DNA of 64,000 bases from positions 248,001 through 312,000 of the IMG/VR virus record IMGVR_UViG_3300012988_000001; one strand, given 5' to 3'. The stretch's first letter is position 1. Each line of letters starts with the position of its first letter. The notes beneath the pieces are model-generated. The model ran no database searches and was not told the DNA's origin. It saw only the letters and a list, made by a program, of their open reading frames with translations. The position numbers and the translations under genes were made by a program. This document shows, piece by piece, positions 20,762 to 54,034 of this stretch.

Positions 20762-21264
20762 TGATGTTTGAGTGGGATCAAGAGAAGCATGAGTACTTCG
20801 ATCCTACTGAAGACGGATTTACCCATATCAATACCTATAGTAAAGGTCGTACCGAATTGGGGAGGATGCTATCAAATTTCGCATTCTCCCCTTTTGTGTA
20901 TGAAGAATATGGTAAGTTCAATTCAGTAGAGGCTTTTTGGTACTGGTACTTAACCGGACAAAAGCATGATGACTTACGTACCCTAAGTGGTTCTTATGCT
21001 AAAGTAAAAGGTCAGAGTTATCATGCTGACCGTACTGAGCATTCACTTACAGAAGAAACCATAGAAGTGATGCAAGGTGCTATTATATGTAAAATTGCAC
21101 AGAATGAAAAACTACAGGAGATGCTAATTTCTAGTACTCTTCCATTCTGTCATTATTACTATATGCATGGTCGGGTTATCAATCCATTTGATGGTCATGA
21201 TTGGTTCTCTGAAACATTGGAGGATATCAGGACTGCGTTAAAATCTGGGACAACTGACCATTAA
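20761..21264 (+). CDS. NADAR-like protein
   Basis: LSNFAFSPF, FNSVEAFW and KIAQNEKLQEMLIS resemble NADAR/YbiA motifs LSNF, F.T.EHY.Q and KF.QN..L...LL.T. Confidence 0.6.
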   Translation: MMFEWDQEKHEYFDPTEDGFTHINTYSKGRTELGRMLSNFAFSPFVYEEYGKFNSVEAFWYWYLTGQKHDDLRTLSGSYAKVKGQSYHADRTEHSLTEETIEVMQGAIICKIAQNEKLQEMLISSTLPFCHYYYMHGRVINPFDGHDWFSETLEDIRTALKSGTTDH

Positions 21265-21275
21265 TGTGATATAAT
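21247..21275 (+). promoter_or_regulatory. GGGACA-class promoter
   Basis: GGGACA-17-TATAAT. Confidence 0.7.
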
Positions 21276-21290
21276 AAATGTAGATGTAAC

Positions 21291-21648
21291 AATTGTGGCT
21301 GCAATGCAGACGTATTAAACCGAACCCCTTGAAAACGTAAAGGGACGATGAGCATGACCACACATGCGAAGTGCAGATGAAACCCGTTCGCGGCAATGCG
21401 GCACTATAAAGAGCGACGTAAGGCACGTAAACGCTCCAAGATAGACATATGAGGTCACTCACCAATATGCTAAGGGAGATGCTTAGGCATCACGTATAGA
21501 GCTTGTTCGAATAGGTTCTATACGAGTGTAGTAAGACTACGACCGTTGCACATGACTGTGATAGAGAGAAACAGAGCAACCCGCTTTCGTTCTTTGACCA
21601 ATTTTAGTACGCTATAGTTACGTCTAAAATTCAGAGAAATTCACAATT
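21291..21648 (+). ncRNA. Candidate large structured non-coding RNA (family unidentified)
   Basis: No credible ORF; own promoter; closing AATTGTG/CACAATT and about 9 internal hairpins, e.g. CGTATAGAGCTTGTT/AATAGGTTCTATACG. Confidence 0.55.
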
Positions 21649-21863
21649 CGAAAATTCCGATGCCACCAGCGTCAGAACTTAACTCAGTACTTTAATTAGT
21701 ACTTTTTTATTGTCTTCATTCCCCCAGTGGGGGATGAAATTGCCTCAACAAACCTCGTCAGTAATAAAAGTACAAAATGAATTGAGTTACGATAGTAACG
21801 AAAATTCTTTGACAATCGTAAGATTGGCAAATATGAACCTTGACAACAATACAGGAATAAAGT

Positions 21864-22100
21864 ATGATAACAGCAATTTGTGAAATGGCTGACCAAGCCA
21901 CTGGTATTGAAGATGCCAGATTGATCGAATCTCATGCTGAATCAGTAAAAGAGTACGAAGATGAAATGGATGAGATGATGGGTATGTATGGCTATCGTCT
22001 ATACTTCTATGACATTGAGTGTACTGGCATTGAGGATTGGACTGAATCAGAAATATATGAGTTTATGCGTGTAAACGCACATTTGGAGATTGATGCATGA
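21864..22100 (+). CDS. Hypothetical acidic protein
   Basis: AGGA RBS. Confidence 0.65.
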   Translation: MITAICEMADQATGIEDARLIESHAESVKEYEDEMDEMMGMYGYRLYFYDIECTGIEDWTESEIYEFMRVNAHLEIDA

Positions 22101-22276
22101 AAGTTAGATTAGAAGAAGATTACCCAGAGTACGAATACGGCCCTCGTGGTGGTGATATCCTTGAAGTAGTTTCACAGGATGAAGAAGAAGGTGTATTCTA
22201 TTGCAAATTTGGTGATGAAACAGATTTTGCCATTTATGAATACGAAGTGGAAGAGGTTATCGAAGATGACCAATAA
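22097..22276 (+). CDS. Small acidic protein (59 aa, not in the ORF track)
   Basis: ATGA overlap and GGAG RBS; MKVRLEEDYPEYEYGPRGGD...; overlaps the true start of the next gene. Confidence 0.65.
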   Translation: MKVRLEEDYPEYEYGPRGGDILEVVSQDEEEGVFYCKFGDETDFAIYEYEVEEVIEDDQ

Positions 22277-23228
22277 ACTAAATCGTTCCATTGGCTGCTT
22301 AATGGGACTAGCAGTAGGTGATGCTGTCGGAACCACATTAGAGTTTAAAGAACGTGATTATGAGAACATTACTGATATGGTAGGTGGTGGTCCGTTTGAT
22401 TTAGATCCGGGACAATGGACTGATGATACCAGTATGGCACTATGCCTAGGTTACGCACTACTTGAAGGTCACGACATCAATAGCATAACAGAAAGTATAA
22501 AGTGGTCAGAAGCCCAATTAGTGAATTATGTTGATTGGTACAGAAACGGTTACTGTAGTTCTAATGGTCACTGTTTTGATATTGGTGGTACTACCCGCAA
22601 CGCATTACTAAATTACATTCGTGATGGTGTTTTGCGTAACAATGATCATTTCCTAGATTCAGGTAATGGTAGCCTTATGCGTCTTGCTCCTATTCCAATC
22701 TATTACAATACGAATAACGCAGAAGAGTTGTTCACTCTTGTGTATGCTGCTGATCTAAGTAGTAGTACTACACACGCTAGCGAATTATGTCGTCAATCTT
22801 GTATTGCTTTCTCAGTACTTTTGAATCGTGCTATCAATGGCAGTACTAGTGAAGGTTCTCCGAATAAAGCGAATCTCTTAGACTTCCCAGCACAAGTTTG
22901 GAGAACATTTGGCGTTTCAAGTAATTTAGTACTTGACATAATGAACGGATCGTATCAAAATAAGACTCGTGATGAAATCAGTTCGAGTGGTTATGTGATT
23001 GATAGCCTAGAAGCCGCTCTATGGGCGTTCTGGAACACTGATAACTTCCGTGACGCAATCCTATTAGCTGCTAACTTAGGTGACGATGCAGACACCGTAG
23101 CGGCGATTACAGGACAGATTGCAGGTGCATTCTATGGCCTAGATGGTATCCCTGATGATTGGGTACAGAAGATTGCGAAGAAAGATAAGATTTTGAAATT
23201 AGCAGAGGACTTGTATAATGCAGGTTGA
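22266..23228 (+). CDS. ADP-ribosylglycohydrolase (DraG/ARH family)
   Basis: GLAVGDAVG, GQWTDDT, GNGSLMR, TTH and GDDADTVAAITG. Confidence 0.92.
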   Translation: MTNKLNRSIGCLMGLAVGDAVGTTLEFKERDYENITDMVGGGPFDLDPGQWTDDTSMALCLGYALLEGHDINSITESIKWSEAQLVNYVDWYRNGYCSSNGHCFDIGGTTRNALLNYIRDGVLRNNDHFLDSGNGSLMRLAPIPIYYNTNNAEELFTLVYAADLSSSTTHASELCRQSCIAFSVLLNRAINGSTSEGSPNKANLLDFPAQVWRTFGVSSNLVLDIMNGSYQNKTRDEISSSGYVIDSLEAALWAFWNTDNFRDAILLAANLGDDADTVAAITGQIAGAFYGLDGIPDDWVQKIAKKDKILKLAEDLYNAG

Positions 23229-25841: not shown

Positions 25842-25931
<90 letters not shown>

Positions 25932-40568: not shown

Positions 40569-41000
40569 ATGAAAACTACTATTCAAATGCGTCGTGCGAA
40601 ACATATGATCGCTATCTGGCTGAAGCCGGGTGATGAGGAATCCCTTGCTGATGCTCTGGATACCGCTCGTCGTTGCTGGAACCGTTCTTCACAGCGTACT
40701 CTGCGTGTATGGGCTAAGACCCTGTTCCGCAATCCAGAACGTTATGAGTTCACTGGTATGGCTCACAAAGAATTAGTTCTGGAAGACCATTTCAATGACG
40801 AAGAACTCATGCAAGTTGATGAAGCAATTCGCAGCCGTACTTTAGTAGTGGATTATGATTATGTAGTCCGTAGCATTATCCAGCACAAGTGGGTATACCG
40901 TTTGAGTACTGAAGAAGCTATCGATTGCGGCATTAAAGCATTCTATGGCGAAGGTCTGAAACATCGTCCAGCTAAACCGGTACTGAAGCCATGCAAATAG
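40569..41000 (+). CDS. Hypothetical early protein
   Basis: AGGA RBS; CTG-rich Leu codons. Confidence 0.7.
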   Translation: MKTTIQMRRAKHMIAIWLKPGDEESLADALDTARRCWNRSSQRTLRVWAKTLFRNPERYEFTGMAHKELVLEDHFNDEELMQVDEAIRSRTLVVDYDYVVRSIIQHKWVYRLSTEEAIDCGIKAFYGEGLKHRPAKPVLKPCK

Positions 41001-42991
41001 AACGCACAGCAGACGGTCCTGATAATGACCGTTTCACTCTAGTGAAAATAAAATTATCTCACGCTGATGAGGGAGATGTCCTTGACAGGCGGGGTATGTG
41101 TGCTACAATGTACCCACAGTATGAGGAACGCATTAACCTCAAATTGAATTCGGCAGGATTGGGCTTCACTCTTGATTTAGAAGAAGCTGAAAAACTCGCA
41201 AATCTACTAACACTCGCACTAAGCGAATTTAAGGAGTAAACTATGTTCAAACGTCTATACACCTCTTTCGTAACTCCGTTCAGTGAAGCTCTGAAAGCAT
41301 GGGAATCCCGTACTGAACAGTCCATCAAAGCTGGTGGTACTACTCCAGTGTATGATCGTTATGACCCTTCACGTGGTCTTCATGCGGAGCCTAAACATGA
41401 CTAAAGCTGAACTTATTGCACAATTGGAAGGTTATCCAGATGATGCAGTAATGGAAGTTGTTCAATATGGCGAACACTATGACATTACGTGTGTAGTACC
41501 ATATGATGATCATGGTGTCCCAATTCTTGAATTGGGTATCTATAAACCAAAAACCGTACCGGAATCGGTGAAGAGGTCAAATGGCTAAGGCTAAAGTAAT
41601 TTTTACTAAAGACGATGTTCTAGGACAAGAGAGTACGGTTATGGTTAATCTAAGGAATCATACAGCACGTAAAAACTCTACCCTAGAAGAGATCGCCAAA
41701 TGCTTTAAAACGAAGCTCCCGCGTGGTAAAACGTACTGGAAGCTACACATGACTCAACTTTCGCATGGAGATTGGTAATGTCTATCAAAATCGATCCAGA
41801 AACACAGAAAGCAGTAGACCCTGAAAGTATCGGTAAAGACATGAAAACACGTGCTATTCTTGCAGTACTCAGCGTGTGCGTCTTTGTCGCTACATGGAAA
41901 ATTGGGGCAGCACTTTTTTCATAAAAGATTTGACTCCCATACAAATTAATAGTATTATACTCTCATCAACTGGTGAGAGTTTTTAAGAGGAACTAAAATG
42001 AAAATTTATACCTTAGATCACGGTGTATATGGTTCAGCGGTAGTAGTTGCTAACAGCAAAGCTGAAGCGTACATTAAAATCAAAGCTGAACACCCACGTA
42101 CTACCGAGTTTGACATTGATCGTGTTCGTGAACACGAAATCAACGAAAACTTTTCATTTTCTAACTGGGGAGATATGTAATGTACAAATATCGTTATGAA
42201 AAAGATGGTCGTGTAACTGACTGCTACCCGGTTGACGAAGATGATACAATGTGGGTACAAAGTGGTAAAACCATCAAAGACCTTATGGAACTGGCTAAAG
42301 AGAAATGGCCTGATGTTGAGTTCGAAGATATCTCAATCGAAGCCGTTCATCACCACCAGTACAGCATCTATTACGATTTGCATGATAGCTCAGATTATGT
42401 GGACTATCTTGTGCTCTCGGTGGAGGTATAAGATGATCAAACGTTATGAACCTAAACAGTGGGAAAGTGCTACTGGTGAGCCATTCGTAAAAATGGTAGA
42501 AGATGTTCATGGTTCCTTCGTAAGCATTCATGATCATCAAATGGAAGTGACCCGTCTTCAAGAACGGATTGCGGAACTTCAAACCGACCGTGACGGTCGT
42601 TGGTATGGGGATGTATAATGTCTAAACTTGCTAAACATTTTCCAATTGTAACTTTATCTGGGTACTCAGCATCATGTTTTTCTGATCTGTTTCAAACAGC
42701 GAAAGAATTCCTTGCAATCCACCCTGATTGTGTAGTACAATTTGAATTCAACGGGCAGCTTATTGGCGTCAATGATTATACCCACGATGACGCATGGGCT
42801 AAGTACATCAAAAGCGAATTTCCAAAGGTGCAATAAATGCCAGTAATCTATTTCAATGTTCAGTACAGTGTTGATGGTGAAATGCGTGAAGAACGTATCT
42901 CTGGCTTAAATAAATACCAAGTAGCTGCTGAACTAGGTTCGAAGTACTTCAAAGGTCACGAACTGTATATTTTCAATATTCAGCTAGCATA
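40991..42991 (+). other. Run of about 10 very small coupled hypothetical genes (e.g. 40991-41239, 41581-41778, 41998-42180, 42180-42431)
   Basis: RBS-preceded, overlapping ORFs of about 48-85 aa. Confidence 0.55.
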
Positions 42992-53948: not shown

Positions 53949-54034
53949 TTACTGTTAGCTCAGATGGTAGAGCGGTTGTACTGGTGAGACTCCAGACAAA
54001 AGGGACACTGGTTCGATGCCAGTACAGTAAACCA
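53949..54034 (+). tRNA. Non-canonical tRNA with an extended anticodon arm (identity undetermined)
   Basis: Perfect acceptor TTACTGT/ACAGTAA, D-arm, T-arm and CCA; anticodon arm TTGT-A-CTGG-TGAGACT-CCAG-ACAA. Confidence 0.65.

What the first reader, a model, noticed from the sequence alone, without database searches (positions are those of the whole stretch)
21276..21822. Promoter-driven non-coding region of about 360-500 nt packed with hairpins, between NADAR-like and ARH genes
A gap of about 600 bp with no credible ORF in an otherwise gene-dense genome, starting right after a GGGACA-class promoter. AATTGTG(21291)/CACAATT(21642) closes a domain containing CCCT/AGGG, GCATG/CATGC, GAGCG/CGCTC, CATAT/ATATG, GATGC-TTAG-GCATC, a long CGTATAGAGCTTGTT/AATAGGTTCTATACG stem, GTAGT/ACTAC and AATTTTAG/CTAAAATT. 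A second nested inverted-repeat block follows at about 21680-21820. Best reading is a large structured ncRNA in the size class of phage ncRNAs such as ROOL or GOLLD; no match is claimed. Alternative: a transcription-primed replication origin.
Basis: partly seen in the sequence, partly recalled or inferred. Interest (0 to 1): 0.65.

Follow-up and report, generated by a model that had tools for sequence, protein, structure and literature searches.

The report
New large structured RNA of jumbo phages
The 600-base gap holds a gene for a roughly 550-nucleotide, pseudoknotted non-coding RNA that matches no Rfam family, is kept in three to five spaced copies in every RaK2-like jumbo phage examined, and also turns up in a few bacterial genomic islands.

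Summary
Window 21265-21863 has no credible ORF and starts at a GGGACA-N17-TATAAT promoter.

The region is one of five diverged copies in this 366-kb jumbo phage, at 41, 108, 188, 269 and 333 kb. All five lie on the + strand and each sits behind the same promoter class.

Homologues occur in 3-5 copies, always on one strand, in all eight RaK2-like jumbo phage genomes searched. Single copies lie in rare Enterobacterales islands, next to an integrase and a CI-like repressor.

Among about 50 non-redundant homologues, invariant sequence blocks alternate with helices full of compensatory changes. Three of these helices are pseudoknots. On 22 pairs, 97.5% pair against 78.6% in shuffles. G-U pairs outnumber A-C pairs 98 to 22, so the + strand RNA is the selected molecule.

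No Rfam 15 family matches (ROOL, GOLLD and group I introns are among its families), and the papers searched do not describe it.

Its proposed closing helix AATTGTG/CACAATT is not conserved. The element runs from about 21284 to 21831.

Function is unknown. My best guess is a stable trans-acting RNA that works alone or with a host factor. The even spacing keeps an RNA-primed replication origin alive as a rival.

The parts
21247..21275 (+). Promoter GGGACA-N17-TATAAT with a TG extended -10. The inferred start of the RNA is near 21282-21285.
   Evidence: 8 sites in the window against 0.05 expected; 28 in the genome, all on the + strand, and five of them lie directly upstream of the five copies. 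The same class sits 9 nt before tRNA-Ser at 25842.
21299..21309 (+). 5' hairpin CUGC-AAU-GCAG. It is present in phage copies. Island copies start downstream of it.
   Evidence: Alignment: the stem sequence varies but stays complementary, often with a GNRA or UUCG loop. In island copies the TATAAT lies just before the core.
21321..21347 (+). Helix H1. Outer pairs 21321-22/21346-47, inner pairs 21326-30/21340-44, with a conserved loop GAAAAYGUA.
   Evidence: Compensatory variants include CCCUU/AAGGG, CCGUU/AACGG and CCGAU/AUUGG. The outer pair varies CU/AG, CG/CG and CC/GG.
21352..21367 (+). Helix H2, flanked by the conserved GAUGAG and CGAAG (tandem G-A type internal loop).
   Evidence: pairs 41/55 and 42/54 change on both sides in 14 and 8 of 40 sequences. 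One search shows the variants.
21370..21405 (+). Helix H3 (21370-74/21401-05) enclosing H4 (21384-86/21391-93; a UUCG loop here, a large variable insert in other copies). It also holds the invariant AGAUGAAACCCG and GGCAAUGCGGC.
   Evidence: H3 is 100% paired with 5 variants (AGUGC/GCACU, ACAGC/GCUGU, UGAGC/GCUCA and others). One search agrees.
21411..21436 (+). Helix H5, GAGCG/CGCUC.
   Evidence: 22 different stem sequences, 97% paired; all five pairs change on both sides.
21440..21478 (+). Conserved GAUAGACAUAU, helix H6 (21450-53/21458-61) and the invariant UAAGGGAG.
   Evidence: (UGAG/CUCA, UAGG/CCUA, UAAG/CUUA) and the alignment.
21478..21524 (+). Variable hairpin H7 (21478-82/21487-91) and long hairpin H8 (21493-21503/21514-21524). 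The H8 loop 21506-21512 forms pseudoknot H14.
   Evidence: Alignment. The stems differ in sequence between paralogues but stay complementary.
21528..21540 (+). Helix H9, GUAG-UAAGA-CUAC, followed by the invariant GACCGUUG.
   Evidence: helix 1: 99.3% paired, and all 3 pairs change on both sides.
21545..21588 (+). Pseudoknot core. H10 (21545-49/21576-80) is interleaved with H12 (21564-68/21584-88). Invariant GAAAC and CAACCCGC lie here.
   Evidence: helices 3 and 5: 100% paired. H12 has 4 of 5 pairs changed on both sides, with 12 variants. There are many G-U pairs and no A-C pairs.
21557..21645 (+). Long-range helix H11, 21557-61 with 21641-45.
   Evidence: helix 4: 99.6% paired, with 4 of 5 pairs changed on both sides. 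One search shows 13 variants.
21506..21652 (+). Pseudoknot H14. The loop of H8 (21506-12) pairs with 21646-52, stacked next to H11.
   Evidence: 11 different 7-bp variants, 96.6% paired, and all 7 pairs change on both sides.
21591..21637 (+). Helix H13 (21591-96/21632-37) carrying a hairpin module (21600-07/21624-31). In other copies this module sits in H7 instead.
   Evidence: helix 6 (94.5% paired, 3 of 3 pairs changed on both sides). The alignments show the module at two alternative places.
21655..21676 (+). Conserved stretch ending in CCAGCGUCAG. Its pairing is not resolved.
   Evidence: Alignment A1 (ACYAYCAnCGUCA is nearly invariant). No register tried by eye fitted all copies.
21686..21709 (+). 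Intrinsic-terminator-like hairpin AGUACU-UUAAUU-AGUACU followed by six U. It is present in three of the five paralogue types.
   Evidence: Alignments: the stems covary (AGAUCC/GGGUCU, GGCACU/AGUGCU, GUACAC/GUGUAC) and are always followed by a U run. It is absent from the 41k and 332k types. The consensus scanner missed it because it has only 2 G-C pairs.
21712..21762 (+). 3' domain, part 1. A pyrimidine-run/G-run hairpin (21716-25/21729-38), then the invariant AUGAAAUUGCCUCAACAAACCUCGUCA.
   Evidence: The G run is invariant. The 5' strand varies only between C and U, which keeps G-C or G-U pairs on the + strand.
21779..21831 (+). 3' domain, part 2. Hairpin B (GAAUU 21779-83/AAUUC 21803-07, with inner stem 21786-90/21795-99) and hairpin C (21808-11/21828-31 around CAAUC-GUAA-GAUUG 21813-26).
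   Evidence: the same architecture appears in the single-sequence folds of nearly all of the 50 homologues, island copies included; stem variants include CAAUC/GAUUG, CAUUC/GAAUG, CUAAC/GUUAG and CUCGCUU/AGCGGG.

Best explanation
Window 21247-21831 is a free-standing gene for a large non-coding RNA of a family not described before, as far as I could find. The RNA is about 430 nt to the internal terminator and about 550 nt with the 3' domain.

Shown:
- It has its own phage-type promoter, the class that also drives a phage tRNA.
- It has no coding capacity.
- It folds on the + strand into a core of about ten helices locked by three pseudoknots (H12, H11, H14). Between the helices lie invariant single-stranded blocks.
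- A 3' domain of three hairpins is equally conserved.
- The genome keeps five diverged copies, and relatives keep three to five.

Inferred:
- The RNA is a stable molecule that acts in trans through its folded shape, as ROOL and GOLLD are thought to do.
- It acts on its own or with a host component common to Enterobacterales, not with a phage protein. The reason is that unrelated small chromosomal islands carry the same RNA without any protein neighbour shared with the jumbo phages.
- The variable peripheral hairpins are structural spacers.
- The invariant loops and junctions are the working surface, serving for binding, assembly or catalysis.

The biochemical activity is not known.
For: Own transcription unit:
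- Promoter.
- The 188-kb copy lies on the + strand between - strand genes.
- In island copies a TGnTATAAT promoter sits just before the core, and the RNA runs towards the 3' end of the repressor gene.

RNA structure under selection:
- 22 pairs, 97.5% paired against 78.6 +/- 0.7 in shuffles (0 of 500 reach it); slid partners give 40-46%; 16 pairs change on both sides.
- 55 pairs, 93.3% paired against 74.5% shuffled; 39 pairs change on both sides; G-U 98 against A-C 22.
- RNAalifold recovers H2-H5.
- the 3' domain folds alike in the homologues.
- fold z-score -3.1 on the + strand, -0.8 on the - strand.

Not coding.

Family:
- (five copies in this genome).
- (homologues elsewhere).
- (3-5 copies on one strand in eight jumbo phage genomes).
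- (copies at positions 1 and 2 are orthologous across genera).

Not a known family: Rfam 15; ARAGORN.

No shared protein partner.

Analogy: the RaK2-related phage PA5oct makes abundant 'putative lncRNAs', shown by RNA-seq (PMC7318152).
Against: - No direct proof of the transcript or its ends. Only contigs could be laid. Short metatranscriptome contigs hit parts of the element, but DNA carry-over cannot be excluded.
- A trans-acting RNA does not obviously need three to five diverged copies held at conserved, roughly even positions on one strand. That pattern suggests a role that depends on position.
- An intrinsic terminator lies between the core and the 3' domain in three paralogue types, so core and 3' domain may not be one molecule.
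- No partner, target or activity was identified.
Confidence: 0.6

Rival explanations
1. The elements are RNA-primed replication origins. The promoter makes a structured primer RNA, comparable to ColE1 RNA II or the T4 oriF/oriG transcripts. This RNA forms a persistent hybrid near the invariant G run and primes leading-strand synthesis. Five co-oriented, spaced origins would serve a 366-kb genome. The bacterial islands would carry one copy so as to be replicated by an infecting jumbo phage.
For: - Copies are roughly evenly spaced and all on one strand. In this genome the gaps are 67, 80, 81, 63 and 75 kb. The chance of a smallest gap of at least 63 kb for five random points on the circle is about 4e-4, by my calculation.
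- GAP32, BF and fHe-Yen9-04 show similar spacing.
- Positions are conserved across genera.
- Each copy has a strong promoter.
- The length of about 430-550 nt resembles ColE1 RNA II (my own knowledge).
- An invariant GGGGGG sits beside a pyrimidine run.
- One island has two ParB-like genes next to the element.
Against: - Three covarying pseudoknots and long invariant single-stranded blocks go far beyond what known primer RNAs need.
- Cumulative GC skew shows no switch at the copies; it follows gene orientation.
- There is no match in 72,556 plasmids.
- The genomes are collinear, so similar spacing in relatives is one observation, not several. Spacing is less even in XaC1 and K64-1.
- In the islands the element lies between the integrase and the repressor, not in a replication module.
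Confidence: 0.15
2. It is a cis-acting leader. The nascent RNA would change the transcribing polymerase (processive antitermination, like HK022 put or EAR) or otherwise control the genes downstream of each copy.
For: - Each copy sits behind a promoter.
- Three paralogue types carry an intrinsic terminator right after the core, as in attenuators.
- All copies share the strand of most genes.
Against: - The 188-kb copy is followed only by - strand genes.
- Island copies run head-on into the repressor gene, with no downstream gene.
- Known antitermination RNAs are 70-120 nt (my own knowledge).
- Downstream genes differ between copies.
Confidence: 0.1
3. It is a repeated selfish or mobile DNA element (intron-like, MITE-like), or a DNA-level binding or recombination site, and the RNA folds are incidental.
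For: It is multi-copy and also occurs in mobile islands next to recombinases.
Against: - Copies within a genome are only 70-89% alike over their matching blocks, while copies at positions 1 and 2 are orthologous across genera.
- It interrupts no gene.
- Compensatory changes keep pairing, and G-U far outnumbers A-C (98 to 22), which only makes sense for the + strand RNA.
- No Rfam family matches, and Rfam includes group I and group II introns.
Confidence: 0.03
4. It encodes one or more small proteins.
For: Mechanical ORFs of 26-79 aa overlap the region. An AUG follows the G run at 21734.
Against: - Each + frame carries 9-16 stops.
- The longest ORFs differ in place and strand among homologues.
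- Insertions and deletions are not in threes in the conserved 3' stretch.
- The ORFs have no Pfam hit.
Confidence: 0.02

Closest known systems
ROOL and GOLLD RNAs (Rfam families; large ornate RNAs of phages and prophages; cryo-EM in PMC12286853)
   Same: - Size class of about 500-800 nt.
- Many helices and pseudoknots, with invariant junctions.
- Carried by phages and integrated elements.
- Independently transcribed.
- No known function.
- No obligatory protein neighbour.
   Different: - No detectable sequence or structure homology: no Rfam hit even at E up to 10.
- Found in Enterobacterales jumbo phages rather than Firmicutes, rumen or lake sequences.
- Present as 3-5 diverged copies per genome at spaced positions.
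- Not adjacent to tRNA genes, except loosely for one copy.
- Multimer formation was not tested.
PA5oct 'putative lncRNAs' ncRNA001-004 (PMC7318152)
   Same: - The host phage belongs to the clade related to RaK2, 121Q and GAP32.
- They are ORF-free + strand regions of 236-619 nt.
- RNA-seq shows they are transcribed; ncRNA002 gives about 5% of phage reads.
   Different: - The covariance model R1 finds nothing in the PA5oct genome.
- The ncRNA002 sequence lacks the family's invariant blocks.
- No structure or covariation was reported for them.
ColE1 RNA II primer / T4 oriF-oriG origin transcripts
   Same: - Promoter-driven RNA of several hundred nucleotides.
- A G run near the 3' part.
- Several copies per large phage genome, as with the T4 origins.
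   Different: - Known primer RNAs are simple stem-loops. Here there are three covarying pseudoknots and long invariant single strands.
- No plasmid carries the element.
- There is no skew signal.
- No antisense regulator was seen.
Group I introns
   Same: Size, pseudoknotted core, and occurrence in T4-like phages.
   Different: - No Rfam family matched, and Rfam includes group I introns.
- The element has its own promoter.
- It lies between genes, and no exon is interrupted.

Membership tests
ROOL (Rfam) | Match to the family covariance model | tested here: not met
   No hit at gathering score. No hit at E up to 10 on the region or E up to 1 on 16 homologous loci.
GOLLD (Rfam) | Match to the family covariance model | tested here: not met
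   Same searches.
Large ornate phage-borne ncRNA (descriptive kind, not a homology family) | More than 400 nt, non-coding, many conserved helices with covariation and pseudoknots | tested here: met
Large ornate phage-borne ncRNA (descriptive kind, not a homology family) | Made as a discrete stable RNA | tested here: inconclusive
   A promoter and an optional terminator are present. The available runs are contigs only. Metatranscriptome contigs cover parts of the element.
Large ornate phage-borne ncRNA (descriptive kind, not a homology family) | Homo-oligomeric RNA-only assembly (as for ROOL and GOLLD) | not testable with these tools
   Needs cryo-EM or native gels.
Group I intron | Match to the Rfam model, and insertion in a host gene with flanking exons | tested here: not met
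   No hit. The element is intergenic with its own promoter.
tRNA / tmRNA | ARAGORN or Rfam detection | tested here: not met
   No tRNA or tmRNA in 21247-21831. The T-loop-like GUUCGAAU in the H8 loop is not conserved and pairs in H14.
ColE1-type RNA II origin | Occurs as the replicon of plasmids | tested here: not met
   No match in 72,556 plasmids.
ColE1-type RNA II origin | Primer RNA of about 550 nt from its own promoter, with a G run needed for the persistent hybrid | tested here: inconclusive
   The promoter, the length and an invariant GGGGGG are present. Hybrid formation is not testable here.
ColE1-type RNA II origin | Antisense RNA I control | not tested
   Only weak consensus promoter-like sites on the - strand in this copy. 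Their conservation was not examined.
T4-type R-loop origin (oriF/oriG) | Phage-specific promoter followed by a DNA unwinding element; initiation mapped there | not testable with these tools
   The promoter class is met. GC skew is uninformative. Needs replication mapping.

The most novel reading that the evidence does not exclude
The five copies are cis-acting replicators. Each would be an ornate, pseudoknotted primer RNA that fires one of five evenly spaced, co-oriented origins of the 366-kb genome. The small Enterobacterales islands carrying a single copy would be satellites that borrow this replicator so that an infecting jumbo phage amplifies them. This would be a new type of origin and the first satellite system of RaK2-like jumbo phages.
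Probability: 0.12. Interest if true: 0.92.

Novelty: new member of a known kind. Interest (0 to 1): 0.8.

Why it matters
Large, intricately folded bacterial and phage RNAs with no known function (OLE, GOLLD, ROOL, raiA) are few, and each has opened a line of structural and functional work.

This family has several advantages as a study object:
- It lives in culturable coliphages such as 121Q, PBECO4, phAPEC6 and GAP32, whose hosts are E. coli and its relatives.
- It is well suited to covariation-based modelling: about 50 diverse sequences and three pseudoknots.
- It comes with a natural puzzle, the several diverged copies at spaced positions, which can be tested by deletion.
- It links virulent jumbo phages with small chromosomal islands.

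If it is a trans-acting particle, it adds a new ornate RNA fold. If it is a replicator, it explains how 350-kb phage genomes start replication.

For annotation, the 3-5 gaps of about 600 bp in every RaK2-like genome, now left blank or filled with spurious 'hypothetical proteins', can be labelled as RNA genes.

Tried and rejected
- **Rfam.** Gathering threshold on the whole window. E-value mode on the region, on 10 phage loci and on 6 bacterial loci. Only tRNAs and chance hits appeared.
- **ARAGORN.** Nothing in the region.
- **Hammerhead idea.** CAGAUGAG...CGAA resembles the hammerhead core, but positions U4 and A6 are not kept (CAGUUGAG in some copies). Rejected by eye.
- **rRNA mimicry or antisense.** I recalled similarities to 16S rRNA, then tested against real 16S and 23S from Serratia. 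nhmmer found nothing at E up to 100, and BLAST found only 9-11 nt words at E 0.5-10. Rejected.
- **Shared flanking proteins among the five copies.** None.
- **Proteins shared between the islands and the jumbo phage.** None, apart from one ARH-like gene in one MAG.
- **The 286-aa island protein.** No Pfam, PHROG or Atlas lead.
- **GC skew as an origin signal.** Uninformative.
- **Plasmid search.** Empty.
- **PA5oct ncRNAs as homologues.** No.
- **Reads.** The high-depth contigs in run X14 probably reflect an abundant related phage together with copies collapsed into one contig. I did not use them as evidence of expression.
- **Literature.** Nine searches found no description of this RNA.
- **The stretch 21655-21676.** I could not find one pairing register that fits all copies.

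Full report
**1. The observation**

The window is bases 248001-312000 of a 366,160-bp virus record with terminal repeats. Its relatives are the RaK2/121Q/GAP32-like jumbo phages.

Between the ORF ending at 21264 and the one starting at 21864 there is no credible ORF. The three + frames of 21284-21835 hold 9, 12 and 16 stops.

GGGACA-N17-TATAAT with a TG extended -10 lies at 21247-21275. The class is real. There are 8 sites in the window against 0.05 expected and 28 in the genome, all on the + strand. One of them ends 9 nt before tRNA-Ser at 25842, so the class drives stable RNA genes.

The + strand folds better than shuffles (z = -3.1). The - strand does not (z = -0.8).

The downstream gene at 22179-23228 is an ADP-ribosylglycohydrolase. 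The upstream 'NADAR-like' gene has no Pfam hit.

**2. It is a family**

The genome holds five copies, all on the + strand, near 41.2, 108.0, 188.2, 269.5 (this one) and 332.7 kb. Each lies directly behind a GGGACA-class promoter, at 40819, 107615, 187835, 269247 and 332397.

The copies share near-invariant blocks separated by hairpins of different sequence. They share no flanking protein genes. The 188-kb copy lies between - strand genes, so it is a transcription unit of its own and not a leader.

A conserved-motif scan found the element in several collections:
- 23 stretches of IMG/VR, all but a few on contigs of more than 100 kb.
- About 95 metagenome stretches, confirmed with an nhmmer profile.
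- Nine bacterial assemblies, confirmed the same way.

A covariance model of the 3' core (R1) finds these copy numbers, always on one strand:
- 5 copies in GAP32, Serratia phage BF, Yersinia phage fHe-Yen9-04 and Xanthomonas phage XaC1.
- 4 copies in 121Q and in one IMG/VR genome.
- 3 copies in Klebsiella phage K64-1.

In a tree of 39 copies, those at positions 1 and 2 group by position across genera, with support 97/92 and 100/100. Positions 3-5 group by position within GAP32, BF and Yen9-04. XaC1 and K64-1 copies partly group within their own genome. The island copies are scattered among the phage copies.

**3. Bacterial copies**

Full-length copies lie in Serratia, Citrobacter, Enterobacter, Silvania and Buttiauxella, in two unclassified Enterobacteriaceae assemblies, and on one short contig binned as Clostridium.

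They are rare:
- 1 of 401 sampled genomes of the order.
- 2 of 5,426 complete E. coli genomes, in an unannotated 1.4-kb gap of an island beside ffs.

The usual layout is: integrase (a large serine recombinase, or a shorter integrase-sized ORF that I did not annotate), then the RNA, which runs towards the 3' end of a CI-like repressor. After that come a Cro-like gene, two unknown genes of 286 and 138 aa, and a DNA invertase.

In one Serratia chromosome the element lies at the island edge, next to two ParB-like genes and a serine recombinase.

In these copies a TGnTATAAT sits immediately before the conserved core.

No protein near the island copies has a relative in the jumbo phage, except an ARH-like gene in one MAG.

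**4. Structure**

I kept 50 homologues that are less than 97% identical to each other.

My own counts on 12 helices (55 pairs) give the following:
- 93.3% standard pairs, against 74.5 +/- 0.4% when the 3' letters are shuffled, and 36-45% when partners are slid.
- 39 pairs with changes on both sides.
- 98 G-U pairs against 22 A-C pairs.

The G-U excess means the + strand RNA is what selection sees.

The session's own tool gives a similar answer on an independent MAFFT alignment of the 3' core, A1:
- 97.5% paired, against 78.6 +/- 0.7% in shuffles (0 of 500 reach the observed value).
- 40-46% with slid partners.
- Covariation score 0.586 against 0.204.

RNAalifold on the 5' half recovers H2-H5, and 11 of 17 pairs show double changes.

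The most telling helices are the pseudoknots:

| Helix | Pairing | Support |
|---|---|---|
| H12 | 21564-68 with 21584-88, interleaved with H10 (21545-49/21576-80) | 12 variants, 100% paired |
| H11 | 21557-61 with 21641-45 | 13 variants |
| H14 | Loop of the long hairpin, 21506-12, with 21646-52 | 11 different 7-bp variants |

The 3' domain (21712-31) folds into the same three hairpins in nearly all of the homologues, island copies included.

Three paralogue types carry a covarying hairpin plus a U run between the core and the 3' domain (21686-21709 here). The other two types lack it.

A hairpin module sits in H13 in this copy and in H7 in others.

**5. What it is not**

- No Rfam 15 family matches, at any threshold tried.
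- It is not a tRNA or tmRNA.
- It is not coding.
- It shows no significant likeness or complementarity to 16S or 23S rRNA.
- It is not on plasmids.
- The RNA-seq-defined lncRNAs of the related phage PA5oct (PMC7318152) are not detectably homologous.
- Nine literature searches found no description of it.

**6. Expression**

Only contigs could be laid. Two true metatranscriptomes hold short contigs that match parts of the element. In one of them nothing else in the 2.5-kb stretch is covered. This is weak support, because DNA carry-over and selection of the runs by this very sequence cannot be excluded.

**7. How it may work**

Shown: the element is promoter-driven, non-coding and strand-specific, and an intricate fold is under long-term purifying selection.

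Inferred: it is a stable RNA acting through its shape. Because jumbo phages and unrelated islands share the RNA but no protein, it probably acts alone or on a host component.

Against a simple trans role stands the copy pattern. Three to five diverged copies sit on one strand, 63-86 kb apart in the four genera with five copies. In this genome the smallest gap is 63 kb. The chance for five random points on the circle is about 4e-4 by my calculation. The collinear relatives are not independent observations.

However, the ornate fold, the lack of any skew signal and the absence from plasmids speak against it.

A cis-acting antitermination leader is unlikely because of the 188-kb copy and the island layout.

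**8. Verdict**

This is a real and well-supported RNA family of the 'large ornate phage RNA' kind, and neither Rfam nor the papers searched describe it. I put confidence that it is a structured RNA gene at about 0.9, and confidence in a trans-acting mode of action at about 0.5-0.6. The biochemical function is unknown.

Noticed in passing
window 21247, 25805, 28748, 48759, 50418, 50788, 57406, 63751 (28 sites genome-wide): A phage promoter class GGGACAAAA-N-(A/T)TGT(GA/CC)TATAAT, found only on the + strand. One site ends 9 nt before tRNA-Ser. Others are followed by 149-254 nt without an ORF (after 28776, 50816 and 57434), which may hold further small RNAs or tRNA leaders.
   Followed up: partly
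window 53949-54034: ARAGORN calls a tRNA with a four-base anticodon (ctgg) at the end of a run of tRNA genes. Rfam did not list it at gathering score. It could be a frameshift-suppressor-like tRNA or a degenerate tRNA.
   Followed up: no
genome 41.2, 108.0, 188.2, 269.5, 332.7 kb (window copy = 21.5 kb): The five copies are spaced 67, 80, 81, 63 and 75 kb apart, all on the + strand. GAP32, BF and fHe-Yen9-04 show a similar pattern.
   Followed up: partly
window 21600-21631; own genome about 188100-188130 and 41140-41180: A hairpin module (AAUUUUAG..UAYNNUAUAGNUNCGUC..CUAAAAUU) sits in helix H13 in some copies and in helix H7 in others, as if a peripheral domain had moved within the RNA.
   Followed up: partly
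L045, L139, L162, L150, L157, L164 (bacterial loci): Small Enterobacterales islands carry the RNA with this layout: integrase, RNA, CI-like repressor, Cro-like gene, unknown 286-aa and 138-aa proteins, DNA invertase. In Serratia fonticola (L157) the neighbouring rof gene is present twice and two ParB-like genes flank the element. What kind of island this is (satellite, defective prophage or defence island) was not settled.
   Followed up: partly
L140 1035-2039: In one Enterobacteriaceae MAG, an ARH-like gene (29% identical to the window's ADP-ribosylglycohydrolase at 22179-23228) lies 4.4 kb from the island copy of the RNA. This echoes the window's RNA-ARH neighbourhood but may be coincidence.
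   Followed up: no
window 21391-21454, 21540-21651 and 22359-22451 in run X14: Contigs of a related sequence have depth 145-750, against about 9 for this phage's own contigs. Probably a more abundant related phage, with copies collapsed into one contig. I did not use this as evidence of expression.
   Followed up: no
phage records H1-H40: In many GenBank records the homologous gaps are annotated with one to four short 'hypothetical proteins'. Given the RNA evidence, these are likely spurious.
   Followed up: no
window 21840-21868: A near-consensus sigma-70 promoter (TTGACA-17-TATGAT) overlaps the ATG at 21864 of the next ORF. Either the ORF start or the promoter call is doubtful.
   Followed up: no
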